This document shows, piece after piece, positions 18,098-23,450 of a DNA stretch of 64,000 bases. The notes below the pieces were generated by a model that made no database searches, was not told the origin of the DNA, and worked only from the letters and a program-made list of their open reading frames with translations. Origin of the DNA: Oikopleura dioica (Eukaryota > Animalia > Chordata); contig OU015566.1 of the NCBI GenBank assembly GCA_907165135.1, positions 5,766,001 to 5,830,000 of the forward strand, written 5' to 3'. Numbering within the stretch: position 1 is the first letter of the stretch; each line of letters starts with the position of its first letter. The position numbers and the translations under genes are program-made.

Positions 18098-18631
18098 ACA
18101 TGACCCTAGCCGGAACAAAAACTGTCATTATCGCGGTATAATTATACATGTATGGCAAAAATCTTACGTGAATTCTTTGTTATTCTTTTGTTAATATGTG
18201 TACAGAATAAAATATTTACAGGTATTAATCAAAAATTCAAAAGAGAAAATACTAAAAGGCAGAACGTGAGATAGTGTCTGAGTAAACTTGTGTTTCCTTC
18301 ACGGAAGGAGCTTGGACGGTTGTTGGAACATGTTGGAAGTCCCGTGGTCTTTCCAAAAAGGCGTACTAAAATGTTAGCTTAGAAAATAGTAAGAGAGAAA
18401 GAATGAATTAAAAATTTGTGAGAGCAATGCGTGCATGATTGATACGAATTTTTCCGAATTTTCACTTTTGCCGGTCACGTGAGAATTCAAAGAACGAACG
18501 ATAATTTTTCTAGCCTTTTTTCTACGAGCTGGAAAAATTCTTCGGGCGTACAGTTTAATGGCCTCTTATGAAATCAAATCACTGATTTTTCACCATTAGA
18601 GCTGTAGCAACCCTGTTAACTGTTTCGCTAA
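18098..18631 (+). repeat. Dispersed repeat, copy 2 (see 9325-9931)
   Basis: Collinear similarity with 9345-9931. Both copies end in attagagctgtagcaaccctg. Confidence 0.85.
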
Positions 18632-18664
18632 AAATTTTACCGCGATGAAATGTGGTGTGTGGTG

Positions 18665-21600
18665 TCACATGGAAATAGCTGGAAGTTTGGCTGGGTAAGC
18701 CTTGCGTCTACTAACTGATTGGTCGTCTACAAGCCGCTCGCTCAGCAGCGCCACCAGTTGGTTTGCGTCCGGCCTCAGTCGCGGGTCGCTCTTCCAACAA
18801 TTTGTCATGAAAGTGTAGACTTCGGGAGAGACGTTCTTCGGCATGCCAAGTCTTAAAGCACTCCGTAAATATTTAGTCAAAGGTCAAAAGGAAAAATAAA
18901 TCTCCAGCTTCTACATACTGTATGTTACATACAGAAGAATTCATTGAGTGGAAACAACAAAGACTACCAAATAGTCGTTCAAGCTTACCTGTCATATTTG
19001 ACGTATTGACTCAGTTGATCCAAATCAACGTCATTGTACGGCAGTCCACCAAACGTACACACTTCCCACATGACAACGCCAAACGCCCAAATATCGGCCT
19101 CGCGCGAATGCTTCTGGCCATTTTCGAATACTTCTGGCGCCCACCAGCGCCATAAATTGCGGTCGTTGGATTTGATTTGGTTATTGCATACTTTGCCTAT
19201 TTTGGGAATGTTTTCTTCTGTCAGGTAGATTACGCTCGCTTTGAAAAAGAAAATGGTAAACAAACAAAAAACTAATTTGTACCTTGCAAGTTGCCGTGAA
19301 TTATTCCTCGGCTGTGCAAATGCGCCAGGCCTTCGACAATATTGACCAGGATTTTCATAATTTGATAATTGGACATGTTCGAAACAGCATTGCCTGTAAG
19401 TCGAGTTTGGCGGAGATGCTCGTCCAGCTTTCCTTTCTCCGCTAATTCGTAGCCCATGAATAGCTTGTCGACTTCGCACCAGGCTCCGAAATATTTCAGC
19501 ACATTTTGATGACGCATTTCGGAAACTAAAATTGTTGTTTGTTCTCGATTTCTGAACACTCCTTACTTTGTGTATCAATTCTAATGCGTTTGTTGATTTC
19601 TCCAAAGGTCTTATCAGTCGCTAATTCAACATTGAGCACTACCGCCACTGCATGTTTGGTGTCGCCGTCCTTCCGCAAGAGCACTTCCCGGACACTCGCA
19701 ATCTTTCCAGATTTAATAACGCCTTTGAGAGTCACTTCATGGTCCTCCAGTGTATGGTAAATTGGGTCTTGAAGTCTGAAACAAATAAATTAATTCGAAA
19801 ACTCAAATACGTTCGCGTTCATAGTCGATCTCGTAAAAATCTGTTCAAATATTTAAAACAGCTTCAGCAAGTGTTTGAAGTTAATTTGACTCTTTTCTGT
19901 CAAGGTCAGTCTTGGCTACAGTTATTTACTTGTCACTGACTGGGAGATGAGCTTGAGCCATTGGAACGACCATTGGAGCGGGAACACCACGGCTCGAAAC
20001 GGCGGGAGAATCAGCTGGAGGTGGAGATGGATCTCTTAAAATTATGATGACTAGGAATCAAGGAGGAATAATCACCTCATTGGAACCGGAACTGGAACCA
20101 CTTTCGGTTTCGGTTCTTCAGATGTAAACGCTGTATTTTCGTACTGTTCCTGGACTAGAGTTTCGTTGACTTTGACTTCCGGTCTTCCGATTGGCTCGAG
20201 TGGCTCCATTACTGGCTCATCATCATCAGTTCCTTCTTCCTCGACATTATCAGATTCCGGCACCCAGGCCTTTTCACAAATTATTATTCGGAAAATCATT
20301 TCTATCTTACCTCATTGTCGTCATCATCGCGTCTCGCTCTGCACCACAAGACGAAGAAAACGATCGTTGTGATCAGGAACATGCCTGTTAGAGCGCTCAT
20401 CACATATGTCAAGATTTCGAACAGCTCGCAGTCATCATCCCCGTCTGTCGTTGGAGGAGCATTTGTTGTGCATACGCAAGGCTCACATTGTCCCGGGGTT
20501 GCTAGAGAAATTGGTCAAAAATGAGTCGAAAAAACACTTGTCCTGGAAATTTGATTTCATGAATTCCCAGTGGCTTTATTTTTGGTACTAAACTACTTGA
20601 TGAACTAATCGGATAGGATTTTGATGGTGGTATGGAAATCATTTTTGATGAGAGTCTGCTGATGAGGCTTTGAATCAGTCTTTCTGTAAAAATTATTTTA
20701 TATATACTTGGCGAAAAAGTAGGACAGGTAACGATAGGACATGTTACTGTATCAGAAGCCGTTGTCGTCACTACTGGACAAGTGGTTTCTGGACAGACAG
20801 GGCAAGAAACTGCCTCTGGTGCTGTCGTTGACACCACTGGGCAAGTAGCTTCAGGACATGCTGGACATGACACTGTCTCTGATTTTTGAGTCGTAACCGT
20901 TGGGCAAGTAACTATTTTCAAAATGAGTGTCAATCATTATTCAAAAATAATAATGATCAAATTAATGATCTGCTAATCGATAATTTACTTGGTGAAAAAG
21001 TCGGGCAGATGACCTCAGGACATTCTTGAGTTGTAGCCTCGGGGCAGGTGACGGTAGGTTCTGTTGGGTAAGTTACTTCGGGGCAAGTGTAAGTCGGGCA
21101 AGTGACCTCGGGGCAAGTTACGATTGGCTCGGTCGGGAAAGTTATTTCGGGGCACGTGACTGTGGGGAAAGTGATCTCGGGACATGTTATGGTCTCTGGA
21201 CAAGTAACTGGGGTCTCAGTGGTCAGTTCAGGACAAGTCACAACCGGTGCGCAAGGTTCTAAAAAAGACAAGTTCAAAATTCAAGCGTAATTTTGAACAG
21301 CAGCATTACCACACGTGATAGCTTCAGTGGAAGCTTCAGTAAACACTGGAGTCGTTGGTTCCACAGTTGTTGTGAACATTTTTTCTGAAAAGCGCAGTTG
21401 GCACACATGCAGTGAATACATATCGATCAGCAAGATAGTATTCAAGCATTATAACAATAAGCAACACACAAAAAATAATAGAGCAAACTCAAACCAAACA
21501 AAAACATTATCTTTGAAATACCTTCAATATTGAAAACTCCCAAAGAAAGATCATCTTCTCGAGCAATAACCGCGCCATTTTCAAGAAGCAAGACTTGAAC

Positions 21601-23450
21601 GACCAAATCCACCGTGTCCGAAAATGTAGTGCTGCTTCCTCCTGTTTTGAGAAGCTCAAAGCTATCGGTGAAAATGTATCCCGGAGTCTTGGAAAGGAGA
21701 ATGACCTCCTGGCCAGCTGGAGGAAAGACTGGAATTGAAAGTTTAAACACCGACTGGTCCTCTGTATTTCGAACGTAGCTCGGAGCATCGATATATTCAT
21801 AATTGGCGGTGTCATCAGGAGTAGTGATGATTGTACTCCAGTCAACATCTGGGTCTTCAATAGTGACCACTACTGTCAAGTAAGAAGTTCTATCCTCTCG
21901 GTCGTCCTGCACAGCTTTCAGCGTGAACTCATGTTTTCCGGGAGAAAGAGCAGTGGCGCAGGAAATCGCCGAGCCTGAGAGCTCAAAACTCGCTGATGGA
22001 AGCAGCTCATAATCAACATTTGTGTTGTCAATCTGTCGGTCACCATCGACCACGAAAAGATCAGTATTCATAGTTAGCAATGTTTCTCCAGTTTTGCAAT
22101 TTTCGTAGGATTGAAAAATCTCAAACTGGTCACCAATGGTACTGATACAGTCAAGATATGATTGACAGCTTTGATCTTCGACAAAAATCGCTGGCAAATC
22201 GTCCACATCCTGGATCCCAACGAGGTCTTGAAAGTAGGACTCAATTTCAGTAGGATGCTCACGTGCATATGCCTCATACTGGAAATATAAGTTGGAACTA
22301 ATATTAGCATCAGCTAAGAGAATATTCTGAAATGCTCCTTCGATGTTCACATCGTCGATTGTCAGGATTTCTTTTTTATTGACATCATCGACGAGCGTAC
22401 TCCCTGGGTACGAGATCCAATCAAATTGAACATCTATCGTACAAAATGGAGATTGTGGGGCGAATCTGAGCCAGTTGCCCGAATCATCCTGCGAATACCA
22501 GCGTTTTGCCATTTCAGCAAGACTCGCCTCTTTGGTAGAACTTTGACCGAGTTCAATTTTCGGGCCAGAAACAATTTTAGGATTTCCAAACTCAGTAGAA
22601 GTTGTGCTTATACCCCACATATCAGCGGCCACTTTTTCACTAAGATCCGTGCTTGAATAGAGACAAATGCCATTAGAAATTCTACACTCATCTCGGATCG
22701 CACAAAAGACGTTATCATAAATATCCAATTTGAAAAGAGGATCGAAGCCATTATTGATCAGACTTGATGTTGGCAGACCAAGATGTTCGAGAATCCTGTT
22801 GCTTGGGGTGCTATCGAGAAGAGAAATTTCCCCGGCAAGTGGCTGGGAGGGATCGGGGAAGATGAATACTTTGTAGTAAATGAAACAGTTGCTAGTTGTT
22901 TTGAGTTTGATCATATGTCGAGGGCCTCCAATTAGTTTCATATCCACCGCATTGCTGAGCTTCAAACTTCCGCTGTCGACGTAAAAGTAATTTTGAGCCA
23001 GTTGCGCTGGCTGAATTTCTGTGCAATGTCCACTTTCACTTCCGAGAGCAGGATTGTTCGTACAGTAAGAGATTCGTCCATCCACCACGGACTCAATATT
23101 AAAGGTATTAAGGTCAAGATCAAACTTGTCCGCATAGAATCCTTCGTGCATATCATTGTAATTCTTGAAGACTCTCGCGATTGAATTGGCCTTATTCATA
23201 ACAGATCCATATAATGTCGGTGTTCCACTTGGTGGGTTTGTACAAGTACCGAAATCGGGGTCATAAACAGGGGCAGCCACGCATTTTGCGTCAACTCCTT
23301 CTCCTTTTTTTGATTTCATTTTTCGGTCAATACAAAGAGGCTTCAGAATATTTTATGAAACTTTCCTTGTTCAGCAGGATATTGAGTAAATGTACAAGCC
23401 GGCGGATCTTGGCCAAAGGCGAGGCTTATCAGCCCGCAAAATAAAATCAT
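18665..23450 (-). CDS. Cadherin-ectodomain receptor tyrosine pseudokinase (RET/Cad96Ca-like architecture)
   Basis: Signal MILFCGLISLAFG at 23450; long exon (ORF 21442-23319) with cadherin-type motifs IQDVDDLPAIF, VVDGDR and LTVVVTIED; Cys/Pro/Thr repeat exons 20500-21400; TM LTYVMSALTGMFLITTIVFFVLWC; TK fold with WWAPE, ADIWAFGVVMWEVCTFGGLPY and CWKSDPRLRP. Confidence 0.75.
20700..21400 (-). repeat. Coding tandem repeats (T/V-T-C-P-E-x-T) in the receptor stalk
   Basis: ORFs 20502-20933 and 20957-21277 contain many VTCPE/ITFPT/TVSCP units, split over similar exons each ending TFSPS. Confidence 0.85.

What the first reader, a model, noticed from the sequence alone, without database searches (positions are those of the whole stretch)
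18665..23450. RET-like cadherin receptor whose tyrosine kinase has lost every catalytic motif
Splice phases allow one gene: signal, cadherin-like repeats (YYKVFIFP recalls RET CLD1 VYLKVFLSP), a Cys/Pro/Thr repeat stalk, TM and a TK domain. The Gly loop reads KSGKIA, the VAVK lysine is V (VAVV), HRDLAARN is HGNLQASV, and DFG is replaced (KIGKV). The C-lobe is well conserved. Known receptor pseudokinases (PTK7, RYK, ROR, EphA10, EphB6, ErbB3) do not have cadherin ectodomains.
Basis: partly seen in the sequence, partly recalled or inferred. Interest (0 to 1): 0.7.

Follow-up and report, generated by a model that had tools for sequence, protein, structure and literature searches.

The report
Cadherin-like receptor with dead kinase
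This is a real 13-exon gene of the planktonic tunicate Oikopleura dioica for a cell-surface receptor with a cadherin-like outer part and a tyrosine-kinase-like inner part; the kinase has lost its catalytic residues yet is very strongly conserved, and the gene belongs to an undescribed tunicate family, not to RET.

Summary
The window (O. dioica OKI2018_I69, chr1) carries one minus-strand gene of 13 exons, 23450-18252. It is identical to the public but uncharacterised model chr1.g1533 (1285 aa). The order of parts is signal peptide, about 600 aa of beta-sandwich modules, a Cys/Pro/Thr repeat stalk, one TM helix, an acidic juxtamembrane region and a full-length tyrosine-kinase-like domain.

The kinase-like domain lacks two of the three loop glycines, the beta3 Lys, the HRD Asp (HGN), the catalytic-loop Asn and the DFG Asp (Lys). 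It is not decaying: against the Norwegian ortholog it is 95.7% identical, with dN/dS about 0.03. The ectodomain is only about 50% identical.

No Pfam cadherin or RET domain is detected. Predicted structures match cadherins almost exclusively; aa 397-513 match one EC domain at Z 9.6, rmsd 2.6 Å.

"RET-like" is not supported. The kinase forms a 100/99 clade with ascidian proteins that have Pfam cadherin repeats and degenerate kinases. That clade lies outside the RET and core FGFR clades (AU p 0.035 for each).

The most likely role is a non-catalytic adhesion or recognition receptor that signals through partners. No RNA reads could be examined. The scan had not noted this family before.

The parts
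18252..23450 (-). Whole coding span of the gene. It has 13 exons: 23450-23366, 23303-21522, 21384-21310, 21258-20989, 20911-20708, 20501-20311, 20269-20076, 20034-19930, 19775-19567, 19525-19283, 19238-18989, 18851-18716 and 18365-18252 (stop included). It equals the public model Oidioi.mRNA.OKI2018_I69.chr1.g1533.t1, 1285 aa.
   Evidence: Every exon piece translates to an exact substring of P0006. Boundaries were solved: all introns are GT..AG except intron 1, which is GA..AG.
23409..23450 (-). Signal peptide (MILFCGLISLAFG, then QDPPAC...).
   Evidence: Read directly from the sequence. A homologous N-terminus with the ACTF..Y.AEQ motif occurs in metagenome copy P0003.
22849..23226 (-). Ectodomain module 1 (aa 55-180; contains GGPRHMIKL and YYKVFIFP). 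Predicted cadherin-like beta-sandwich.
   Evidence: AF2 model of aa 55-400: mean pLDDT 61.5, about 80 in this module. In a search of all PDB representatives almost all top hits are cadherin domains, including RET CLD1 2x2u (Z 6.3, rmsd 3.4 Å over 91 aa) and Fat4 EC1 (Z 5.8). All Z values are below 8.
22201..22848 (-). Ectodomain modules 2-3 (aa 181-396). Beta-rich and poorly modelled. The stretch ends in a cadherin-type linker, DVDDLPAIF.
   Evidence: Searches give low pLDDT. Foldseek hits are protocadherins mixed with Ig Fabs, E about 3e-5. The linker motif is invariant across the family and recurs in ascidians as DYDDLPPVF, DVDNHPPQF and DDDNHAPQF.
21850..22200 (-). Ectodomain module 4 (aa 397-513). 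This is the best-supported cadherin (EC) repeat, with VVDGDR and DDREDR acidic motifs.
   Evidence: pLDDT is 75-83. VIA-align gives Z 9.6, rmsd 2.6 Å over 96 aa and 23% identity to mucin-like protocadherin EC2 (6oae); other matches are PCDH15 EC11, cadherin-6 EC2 and CDH23 EC1. All 50 top Foldseek hits are cadherins, E 4e-8 to 2e-6.
21523..21849 (-). Ectodomain module 5 (aa 514-622). Second tandem EC-like sandwich, proximal to the membrane.
   Evidence: aa 397-622 align on two consecutive EC repeats of many cadherins (Z 8.2-9.2). There is weak collinear BLASTP similarity to the last ectodomain module of Ciona P0030 (E 0.016).
20708..21384 (-). Stalk (aa 623-806, exons 3-5). A Thr-rich start is followed by TCPE(V/I)T-type Cys/Pro/Thr repeats.
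   Evidence: Sequence. TRF period 69 at 21037-21189. A similar CP/T stalk occurs in the Norwegian ortholog. The paralog g625 has only a short stalk, and ascidians have Thr-rich mucin stalks.
20311..20501 (-). Exon 6: small Cys cluster (GQCEPCVC), TM helix (aa 835-858, 20415-20344) and the stop-transfer sequence CRARRDDDD.
   Evidence: Sequence. It is 96% identical to the Norwegian ortholog, with dN/dS 0.025.
19733..20269 (-). Acidic, Pro-rich juxtamembrane region (aa 870-983), with the conserved DP(I/V)YHTLEDH motif just before the kinase fold.
   Evidence: It is 70-81% identical to the Norwegian ortholog, with dN/dS 0.06-0.10.
18746..19732 (-). Tyrosine-kinase-like pseudokinase domain (aa 984-1238, exons 9-12).
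   Evidence: Pfam PF07714, 139.8 bits, E 1.3e-40. The best solved single-domain relatives are FGFR1-4, with E from 1.6e-30 for the window protein and 2e-27 for the paralog. It is 95.7% identical to the Norwegian ortholog, with dN 0.028, dS about 1.07 and dN/dS about 0.026.
19691..19717 (-). Degenerate Gly-rich loop IKSGKIASV (aa 989-997).
   Evidence: Alignment A2 against kinases with GKGSYTQV.
19634..19651 (-). beta3 strand AVAVVL (aa 1011-1016). No lysine in or next to it (VAIK Lys lost).
   Evidence: Alignment A2: the VAIK Lys of the hemichordate kinases aligns with Leu1016.
19284..19298 (-). Catalytic loop HGNLQ (aa 1115-1119), continued by ASV in exon 11. The HRD Asp is Asn, and the loop Asn is lost.
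   Evidence: HMMER alignments to FGFR4/FGFR1 (paralog P0001) and to EGFR (window protein); alignment A2.
19186..19194 (-). KVC (aa 1135-1137) at the DFG position. The Mg-binding Asp is replaced by Lys.
   Evidence: KIGKVC aligned with KIADFG.
18252..18365 (-). Last exon (aa 1249-1285, YAFLERPRDFQH...SRSAF, plus stop).
   Evidence: Exact match to P0006. It is conserved in the Norwegian ortholog at 84%. The paralog's C-terminus (LYEFLV) resembles its YAFLE start. It was co-duplicated with exon 12 in a 3'-end fragment at G000:C4:5.674 Mb.

Best explanation
The locus is one intact, expressed-type gene (public model g1533) for a type-I membrane protein.

The outer part is a chain of about five cadherin-like beta-sandwich modules on a Cys/Pro/Thr stalk. 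The inner part is a tyrosine-kinase fold that cannot bind Mg-ATP productively or transfer phosphate, because the beta3 Lys, the HRD Asp, the catalytic-loop Asn and the DFG Asp are all replaced, the last by Lys.

The gene belongs to a tunicate-specific family of cadherin-ectodomain receptor pseudokinases. There are two paralogs in this genome, with orthologs in Norwegian O. dioica and in Ciona, Clavelina and Styela. The family descends from an active receptor tyrosine kinase of the FGFR/RET/Tie-type group, but it is not an ortholog of RET or FGFR.

Inferred mode of action: the fast-evolving ectodomain binds a ligand or a counter-receptor on another cell or surface. The extremely constrained dead kinase, TM segment and the flanking Tyr motifs (DPIYHTLED, YAFLE) act as a docking or allosteric module for an active partner kinase and for adaptors, as in PTK7, RYK, ROR and ErbB3.

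Shown here: gene structure, domain order, loss of motifs, purifying selection and family membership. Inferred: cadherin fold (prediction only), lack of nucleotide binding, and the scaffold/co-receptor role.
For: - Gene model: 13 exon pieces are 100% identical to CAG5104779.1. That model was made with AUGUSTUS using RNA-seq intron and exon hints (PMC8008620).
- Same architecture elsewhere: paralog g625, the Norwegian model CBY33160 of 1173 aa, and ascidian RefSeq models.
- Dead motifs. The same substitutions (HGNLQAS, KIGKVCNN, no beta3 Lys) occur in the paralog at 67% identity, in the Norwegian ortholog, and partly in a 40%-identical metagenome copy that keeps IIHGNLQ.
- Constraint: kinase exons have dN 0.028 and dS about 1.07, so dN/dS is about 0.026; the TM exon gives 0.025.
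- Cadherin fold: all top Foldseek hits are cadherins. One EC domain matches at Z 9.6, rmsd 2.6 Å. An unbiased search of 48,161 chains returns almost only cadherins. A DxDD-x-P-x-F linker is shared with ascidians. The ascidian relatives have two Pfam Cadherin hits each (E 1e-14 and 3e-21).
- Phylogeny: Oikopleura plus ascidian clade at 100/99. RET forms a separate clade at 97/99 and the core FGFRs another at 100/99.
Against: - Transcription and the exon joins therefore rest on public gene models and on conservation.
- One Norwegian haplotype annotation splits the gene into an ectodomain protein (CBY21602) and a kinase protein (CBY21601).
- No cadherin Pfam hit or any sequence match to a solved cadherin exists for the Oikopleura ectodomain.
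- The structure models are shallow (6-7 sequences), with mean pLDDT of 49 and 61.5. Only aa 397-622 are well modelled.
- Ectodomain homology to the ascidian proteins is not significant by sequence (hhalign E 0.08, BLASTP E 0.016).
- The tunicate clade sits on a very long branch (2.66 substitutions per site), so its deeper placement is unsafe.
- The non-catalytic mechanism is inferred from sequence alone. Some proteins classed as pseudokinases turn out to have unusual activities.
Confidence: 0.72

Rival explanations
1. The family is the highly derived tunicate ortholog of RET. In this reading RET kept a cadherin-like ectodomain but lost its Cys-rich domain and its catalysis in fast-evolving tunicates.
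For: - Overall plan resembles RET: cadherin-like modules, a Cys-containing membrane-proximal part, TM and a TK fold.
- RET CLD1 (2x2u) is the second-ranked structural match of module 1 (Z 6.3).
- No RET_CLD1 or RET_CRD match and no clearly RET-like kinase was found in this genome; the best RET-kinase matches are 38-49% identical.
- The long tunicate branch could mislead the tree.
Against: - The kinase lies outside the 97/99 RET clade.
- The AU test disfavours RET plus tunicates (p 0.035), though equally so for FGFR plus tunicates.
- The best solved relatives are FGFRs, with no RET among the top 60.
- No RET-specific Pfam domain is found in any family member, including the less derived ascidian ones.
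- The RET CLD1 match is tied with many ordinary cadherins and is below Z 8.
- The genome searches for RET domains had no positive control.
Confidence: 0.13
2. There are two adjacent genes: a secreted or anchored cadherin-like protein ending in the hydrophobic ORF tail at 21442, and a separate cytoplasmic pseudokinase. On this reading the single model is an annotation fusion.
For: The big ORF runs on for 26 mostly hydrophobic codons to a stop at 21442. One Norwegian annotation splits the locus into CBY21602 and CBY21601. No reads were examined here.
Against: - There is a canonical phase-1 GT donor at 21521.
- Every later exon is in phase, with GT..AG introns of 41-350 nt.
- The read-through tail is not conserved: the Norwegian ortholog stops after 3 codons, and the paralog has no such tail.
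- The stalk and TM exons between the two halves would be orphaned. The TM exon is under dN/dS 0.025.
- The kinase half has no start context of its own.
- Four independent gene models (OKI g1533, OKI g625, Norwegian CBY33160, three ascidian RefSeq models) give the fused architecture.
Confidence: 0.05
3. The domain is not dead. It retains an atypical catalytic or nucleotide-binding activity, for example with a Gly-loop lysine standing in for the beta3 Lys as in WNK, or another chemistry as in SelO or POMK.
For: Extreme purifying selection (dN/dS about 0.026) shows that the fold matters. Two lysines sit in the Gly loop (IKSGKIAS). The alphaC Glu (SEM) appears retained.
Against: Four independent catalytic elements are lost together: the beta3 Lys, the HRD Asp to Asn, the loop Asn, and the DFG Asp to Lys. 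A Lys at the DFG position would repel Mg and occupy the phosphate site. The ascidian relatives have different, also degenerate, residues at the same positions (HCH/HGK; DVE/DYE/DFQ), so no alternative active-site pattern is conserved.
Confidence: 0.08
4. The locus is a decaying pseudogene or a lineage-specific annotation artefact with no function.
For: All catalytic motifs are lost. The ectodomain is only about 50% identical between cryptic species.
Against: The gene has 13 open, in-phase exons. The kinase-like domain is 95.7% identical across lineages whose synonymous sites are near saturation. The paralog and distant relatives keep the same architecture.
Confidence: 0.02

Closest known systems
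Uncharacterised ascidian cadherin/TK-like proteins (Ciona intestinalis LOC100187099 XP_026691335; Clavelina lepadiformis LOC143459998 XP_076813458; Styela clava 'mucin-17-like' XP_039263307)
   Same: Closest kinase relatives: 31-34% identity and a 100/99 clade. They share the plan: signal peptide, cadherin repeats, Thr-rich stalk, TM, acidic juxtamembrane region and a degenerate kinase. They also share the D-x-D-(D/N)-x-P-x-F linker followed by Cys residues.
   Different: Ascidian ectodomains score on Pfam Cadherin (two repeats each in Ciona and Clavelina); the Oikopleura one does not. Ectodomain similarity is not significant by sequence. Ascidians keep an Asp at the DFG position, and two of them keep the beta3 Lys; Oikopleura has lost both. 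None of these proteins has been studied.
RET receptor tyrosine kinase
   Same: A cadherin-like ectodomain in front of a single TM helix and a tyrosine-kinase fold of the same broad RTK group. RET CLD1 is among the tied structural matches of module 1.
   Different: No RET_CLD or RET_CRD domains are present. The kinase lies outside the RET clade. RET is catalytically active and signals with GFRalpha/GDNF-family ligands; here every catalytic motif is gone.
Drosophila Cad96Ca (Stitcher) type: cadherin repeat plus RET-like active kinase
   Same: Combination of a cadherin repeat with an RTK kinase domain.
   Different: Cad96Ca is active and has one cadherin repeat. Genuine Cad96Ca was not in my tree; proteins named 'Cad96Ca-like' by NCBI (Oppia, Montipora, Ptychodera) do not group specifically with the tunicate clade, apart from a weak 76/58 link to the hemichordate group.
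Receptor tyrosine pseudokinases (PTK7, RYK, ROR1/2, EphA10, EphB6, ErbB3, STYK1)
   Same: Type-I receptors with a conserved but catalytically impaired TK fold that signal as co-receptors or scaffolds. The set of eight human members is reviewed in PMC13259870. This is what the gene most probably works like.
   Different: From established knowledge of these families, their ectodomains are Ig (PTK7), WIF (RYK), Ig/Frizzled/Kringle (ROR), ephrin-binding with FN3 (Eph) or L-domain/furin-like (ErbB3), or almost none (STYK1); none is cadherin-like. Most keep several catalytic motifs; here all are lost. No orthology to any of them was seen. STYK1 was not tested.
FGFR1-4 kinase domains
   Same: Best-scoring solved single-domain relatives of the kinase-like domain, with E from 1.6e-30 for the window protein and 2e-27 for the paralog.
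   Different: O. dioica has three canonical FgfRs with Ig ectodomains, described elsewhere (bioRxiv 10.64898/2025.12.09.693154). This gene is not one of them, and the tree puts it outside the core FGFR clade (AU p 0.035).

Membership tests
RET | Four RET-type cadherin-like domains (Pfam RET_CLD1/3/4) | tested here: not met
   No RET_CLD Pfam hit at E<=1 in the exons or in P0006, P0001 or P0293. Structurally, RET CLD1 is one of many tied cadherin matches (Z 6.3), which does not discriminate.
RET | Cys-rich domain (Pfam RET_CRD, PF22540) between the CLDs and the TM | tested here: not met
   No hit in the protein. No hit in the genome six-frame search either, but that search had no positive control. 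The stalk is made of TCPE-type repeats instead.
RET | Kinase domain orthologous to RET | tested here: not met
   The ML tree places it outside the 97/99 RET clade. The AU test of RET plus tunicates gives p 0.035. This is marginal, and a long branch is involved.
RET | Catalytically competent kinase (VAIK Lys, HRD, DFG) | tested here: not met
   All are replaced.
Cadherin superfamily | At least one extracellular cadherin (EC) repeat recognisable by sequence profile | tested here: not met
   Pfam Cadherin is absent at E<=1. A profile search of PDB sequences finds no cadherin.
Cadherin superfamily | EC fold (seven-strand Greek-key sandwich) in tandem, with acidic Ca-binding linkers | tested here: inconclusive
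   Predicted only. aa 397-513 match EC domains at Z 9.6, rmsd 2.6 Å, and aa 397-622 match two tandem ECs. The linker DVDDLPAIF and the DGD and DRED motifs are present. Model depth is 6 sequences, and Ca binding was not tested.
Receptor tyrosine pseudokinase (functional class) | Type-I membrane topology with an intracellular TK fold | tested here: met
   Signal peptide, single TM and a full-length PF07714 match.
Receptor tyrosine pseudokinase (functional class) | Loss of at least one of the beta3 Lys, the HRD Asp or the DFG Asp | tested here: met
   All three are lost, plus the loop Asn and two Gly-loop glycines.
Receptor tyrosine pseudokinase (functional class) | Maintained by selection (not a pseudogene) | tested here: met
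   dN/dS is about 0.026 over 279 kinase codons against the Norwegian ortholog.
Receptor tyrosine pseudokinase (functional class) | No phosphotransfer or nucleotide binding | not testable with these tools
   Needs biochemistry.
Tunicate cadherin-pseudokinase clade (undescribed) | Kinase-like domain monophyletic with Ciona LOC100187099, the Clavelina protein and the Styela protein | tested here: met
   100/99 support. These are the top single-domain hits among 1.84 billion representatives.
FGFR | Ig-like ectodomain and a kinase within the FGFR clade | tested here: not met
   No Ig Pfam hit. The kinase lies outside the 100/99 core FGFR clade, and the AU test gives p 0.035.

The most novel reading that the evidence does not exclude
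The family is a species- or self-recognition receptor. A very fast-evolving cadherin ectodomain has a mosaic history (gene conversion or exon swapping between the two paralogs). It is coupled to an almost frozen dead-kinase signalling module. Divergence of the ectodomain between cryptic O. dioica species (about 50% identity against 96% for the kinase) would then contribute to gamete or cell recognition barriers. Alternatively it would reflect an arms race with a pathogen or symbiont ligand.
Probability: 0.12. Interest if true: 0.8.

Novelty: new variant of a known kind. Interest (0 to 1): 0.55.

Why it matters
Receptor pseudokinases are a small, much-studied class, and the characterised ones do not carry cadherin ectodomains. 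Here a chordate lineage has a conserved family that joins a cadherin-type adhesion or recognition module to a kinase fold stripped of all catalytic residues, and that fold is under very strong constraint (dN/dS about 0.03).

This gives a natural test case for purely non-catalytic signalling by a TK fold. It also adds a lineage-specific receptor to the otherwise reduced RTK toolkit of larvaceans. The steep contrast between ectodomain and cytoplasmic evolution between cryptic O. dioica species points to a recognition function that can be tested in a tractable organism with a very small genome.

The family's ascidian members (Ciona) are equally unstudied and are experimentally accessible.

Tried and rejected
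2. Pfam on each exon and on the full public protein gave no ectodomain family.
3. ESM Atlas features gave only sub-threshold bacterial SGBP/RibLong/cadherin-like clusters at 0.84-0.86. I treated these as a weak lead only.
4. A profile search of PDB sequences with the ectodomain alignment gave only a chance eS4 hit.
5. hhalign of the Oikopleura against the ascidian ectodomain profiles gave E 0.08, collinear but not significant. BLASTP pairs were not significant, except E 0.016 for the last module.
6. Searches of the window's genome for RET_CLD1 and RET_CRD found nothing. The controls were silent too, so absence is not shown.
7. Literature searches for an Oikopleura or tunicate cadherin pseudokinase, and for the RET status of Ciona, found nothing relevant. 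The Ciona protocadherin paper is about another gene.
8. I tried to polarise the 12 kinase sites that differ between the Okinawa and Norway orthologs, to choose between gene conversion and late duplication. The result was uninformative.
Searches used exon references or the identical public protein by its id. In scripts the exons were handled piecewise. The one exception was a local check that concatenated exons using hand-set bounds; it did not match, because the bounds were off by a few bases. The bounds were then solved junction by junction.

Full report
**What is there**

The window is G000:C4:5766001-5830000 of a 64.3-Mb, 19-scaffold genome. This matches the Oikopleura dioica OKI2018_I69 assembly (PMC8008620). 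On the minus strand between 23450 and 18252 lies a gene with short introns.

I first built the model by hand from the three-frame translation and splice phases. The word search then returned the public protein CAG5104779.1 (Oidioi.mRNA.OKI2018_I69.chr1.g1533.t1; P0006, 1285 aa). Each of its 13 exon pieces is encoded exactly by the window.

The solved boundaries are 23450-23366, 23303-21522, 21384-21310, 21258-20989, 20911-20708, 20501-20311, 20269-20076, 20034-19930, 19775-19567, 19525-19283, 19238-18989, 18851-18716 and 18365-18252. All introns are GT..AG (41-350 nt) except intron 1. For that intron GA..AG is the only solution with an AG acceptor. Non-canonical introns make up 11% of introns in this annotation.

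The public model instead splices to a last exon at 18365-18252. That exon is conserved at 84% in the Norwegian ortholog, and the paralog's C-terminus (LYEFLV) resembles its YAFLE start. It was also co-duplicated with exon 12 in a gene fragment 110 kb away.

**Protein anatomy**

- Signal peptide.
- About 600 aa of ectodomain.
- A stalk of Thr-rich sequence and then TCPE(V/I)T-type Cys/Pro/Thr repeats (69-nt period).
- A small Cys cluster, then the TM helix ILTYVMSALTGMFLITTIVFFVLW followed by CRARRDDDD.
- A roughly 125-aa acidic, Pro-rich juxtamembrane region ending in DPIYHTLEDH.
- A full-length PK_Tyr_Ser-Thr match (aa 984-1238, 139.8 bits, E 1.3e-40).
- A 47-aa tail.

**The kinase is dead but strongly constrained**

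Alignments to FGFR and EGFR and to related kinases show the following.
- The Gly loop reads IKSGKIASV, so one of three glycines is left.
- The beta3 strand AVAVVL has no Lys.
- HRDLAARN has become HGNLQASV.
- KIADFG has become KIGKVC, so the Mg-binding Asp is a Lys.
- The 22-residue activation segment has no Tyr.
- WWAPE, DIWAFGVVMWE and CWKSDPRLRP are conserved.

The same substitutions occur in the own-genome paralog g625 (P0001, 976 aa, G000:C4:2.56 Mb, 67% identical in the kinase). They also occur in the Norwegian O. dioica ortholog (CBY33160, P0293). A 40%-identical metagenome copy keeps IIHGNLQ.

I fetched the Norwegian locus (L038) and computed Nei-Gojobori values exon by exon.

| Region | Result against the Norwegian ortholog |
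|---|---|
| Four kinase exons | dN 0.028, dS about 1.07, dN/dS about 0.026 (95.7% aa identity) |
| TM exon | dN/dS 0.025 |
| Juxtamembrane exons | dN/dS 0.06-0.10 |
| Tail exon | dN/dS 0.22 |

A decaying pseudogene is therefore excluded.

**The ectodomain**

No Pfam family is found at E<=1. No sequence match to any solved chain is found either. The ESM Atlas gave only sub-threshold leads.

The exhaustive HMMER search of 1.84 billion representatives with the paralog found ectodomain relatives only among Oikopleura-type sequences.

An AF2 model of aa 1-640 from a 6-sequence alignment is poor overall (pLDDT 49) but reaches 70-83 over aa 420-620.
- All 50 best Foldseek PDB hits are cadherins or protocadherins, with E 4e-8 to 2e-6.
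- VIA-align matches aa 397-513 to single EC domains. The best is 6oae at Z 9.6, rmsd 2.6 Å over 96 aa and 23% identity. PCDH15 EC11, cadherin-6 EC2 and CDH23 EC1 follow at Z 8.2-8.4. Residues 397-622 match two tandem ECs.

A separate model of aa 55-400 (pLDDT 61.5, pTM 0.61) was searched without a Foldseek prefilter against 48,161 chains. It returns almost only cadherin domains. These include human RET CLD1 (2x2u; Z 6.3, rmsd 3.4 Å over 91 aa). All Z values are 6.5 or less, below the level at which such matches can be trusted singly. Foldseek mixes protocadherins with Ig Fabs for this half.

The family-invariant DVDDLPAIF linker, the VVDGDR motif and the DDREDR motif are cadherin-type calcium-linker signatures.

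I conclude that the ectodomain is a chain of about five cadherin-like sandwiches. Two of them are well supported. This rests on prediction and motifs only.

**Relatives and phylogeny**

The best single-domain kinase hits in the exhaustive search are three ascidian proteins: Ciona intestinalis LOC100187099, Clavelina lepadiformis LOC143459998 and Styela clava 'mucin-17-like'.
- The Ciona and Clavelina proteins carry two Pfam Cadherin repeats each (E 1.2e-14 and 3e-21).
- All three have the same plan: signal peptide, cadherin-type modules with DDDNHAPQF, DVDNHPPQF or DYDDLPPVF linkers, a Thr-rich stalk, a TM helix, an acidic juxtamembrane region and a kinase fold.
- Their kinases are also degenerate: HCH or HGK for HRD, DVE, DYE or DFQ for DFG, and WQALE for WMAPE. 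Clavelina and Styela keep the beta3 Lys.

I made a maximum-likelihood tree (LG+C20+F+G4) of 36 kinase domains. These came from a named set of RET, FGFR, Tie-, Mer- and Kit-like and other RTKs.
- Oikopleura plus ascidians group at 100/99, on a long stem of 2.66 substitutions per site.
- RET forms a separate clade at 97/99, and the core FGFRs form another at 100/99.
- The tunicate clade is weakly (76/58) sister to a hemichordate group. That group has mucin-like ectodomains and kinases with HGD and DIG.
- AU tests marginally reject both RET plus tunicates and FGFR plus tunicates (p 0.035 each).
- By sequence, the best solved relatives are FGFR1-4, with no RET in the top 60.
- The genome gave no RET_CLD1 or RET_CRD match, but those searches lacked a positive control. 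Its best RET-kinase matches are only 38-49% identical.

The family is therefore a tunicate-specific offshoot of the FGFR/RET-type RTK group, not RET. A strongly derived RET ortholog cannot be fully excluded (about 0.13).

The recent survey of O. dioica FgfRs names three canonical Ig-type receptors and does not mention this family. I found no paper on it.

**One gene or two**

The 26-codon hydrophobic read-through after exon 2 is not conserved. The Norwegian ortholog stops after 3 codons, and the paralog has no such tail. The stalk and TM exons, all in phase, would be orphaned if the locus were split.

Fused models exist independently for g1533, g625, CBY33160 and the three ascidian genes. One Norwegian haplotype annotation splits the locus into CBY21602 and CBY21601.

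The OKI models were made with RNA-seq intron and exon hints.

**An unexplained mosaic**

Between the Okinawa and Norway orthologs, the ectodomain and stalk are only 48-55% identical (pN 0.31, pS saturated). From exon 6 onward identity jumps to 96% in the TM and kinase parts.

The g1533 ectodomain is nevertheless 66% identical to that of its own-genome paralog g625. An ectodomain tree groups the two Okinawa paralogs at 100/100 against the Norwegian and metagenome copies. In the kinase, by contrast, g1533 is 96% identical to the Norwegian gene and 67% to g625.

Two explanations remain.
- An old gene conversion or exon swap of the ectodomain between paralogs.
- A duplication after the lineages split, with a very fast-evolving g625 and fast ectodomains.

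The 12 kinase sites that differ between the orthologs do not decide between them.

**Mechanism**

Shown here: type-I topology, loss of all catalytic motifs, very strong constraint on the TM segment and kinase fold, and fast ectodomain evolution.

Inferred: the ectodomain binds a ligand or counter-receptor. The dead kinase, together with the conserved Tyr motifs (DPIYHTLED before the fold, YAFLE after it), serves as a docking or allosteric module for an active kinase and for adaptors. This is how PTK7, RYK, ROR and ErbB3 work (class reviewed in PMC13259870, listed). A Lys at the DFG position together with loss of the beta3 Lys predicts no Mg-ATP binding.

Exons were searched by reference, and the identical public protein was used by its id. 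Scripts handled exons piecewise. The one exception was a local concatenation check with hand-set bounds, which did not match because the bounds were slightly off; the bounds were then solved junction by junction.

**Verdict**

The gene is a new variant of a known kind, namely a receptor tyrosine pseudokinase with a cadherin-type ectodomain. It belongs to an undescribed tunicate family that already sits unnoticed in public annotations. Interest 0.55.

Noticed in passing
L010:1537-1979 (= G000:C4:~5674535-5675013, + strand), about 110 kb before the window gene: Partial duplicate of the 3' end of the gene. It holds an exon-12-like piece (93% aa identity, MTNCWKSDPRLRPDANQLVALLSERFVDGQS...) and an exon-13-like piece (KKPRDFRHVPTTVQAPSVKETQVYLDTISRSAF). 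It lies just downstream of a multi-C-type-lectin ORF. No other family exons are present, so it is probably a gene fragment.
   Followed up: partly
window 21523-23303 versus L002 (G000:C4:2562108-2563856) and L038:3001-4596: The ectodomain of g1533 is closer to its own-genome paralog g625 (66%) than to its Norwegian ortholog (about 50%), although the kinase shows the opposite (67% versus 96%). This points to gene conversion or exon swap, or to strongly unequal rates. The breakpoint lies between the stalk exons and exon 6.
   Followed up: partly
window 23304-23365: Intron 1 of the gene is non-canonical (GA..AG, 62 nt). The other 11 introns are GT..AG, and four of them are exactly 41 nt long.
   Followed up: yes
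P0120, P0151, P0168 (Saccoglossus, Ptychodera, Glandiceps proteins): Hemichordate receptors with a Thr-rich mucin-like ectodomain, a TM helix and a kinase with HGD...SLS (loop Asn lost) and DIG instead of DFG. NCBI names them MuSK-like or Cad96Ca-like. They are a weak (76/58) sister group of the tunicate pseudokinase clade and possibly a second undescribed group of impaired RTKs.
   Followed up: partly
window 21442-21522: The intron-2 read-through frame stays open for 26 mostly hydrophobic codons (GISKIMFLFGLSLLYYFLCVAYCYNA*). Intron retention would give an anchored ectodomain without a kinase. The tail is not conserved in the Norwegian ortholog or in the paralog, so it is probably chance.
   Followed up: yes
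I did not examine whether it affects the 3' UTR.
   Followed up: no
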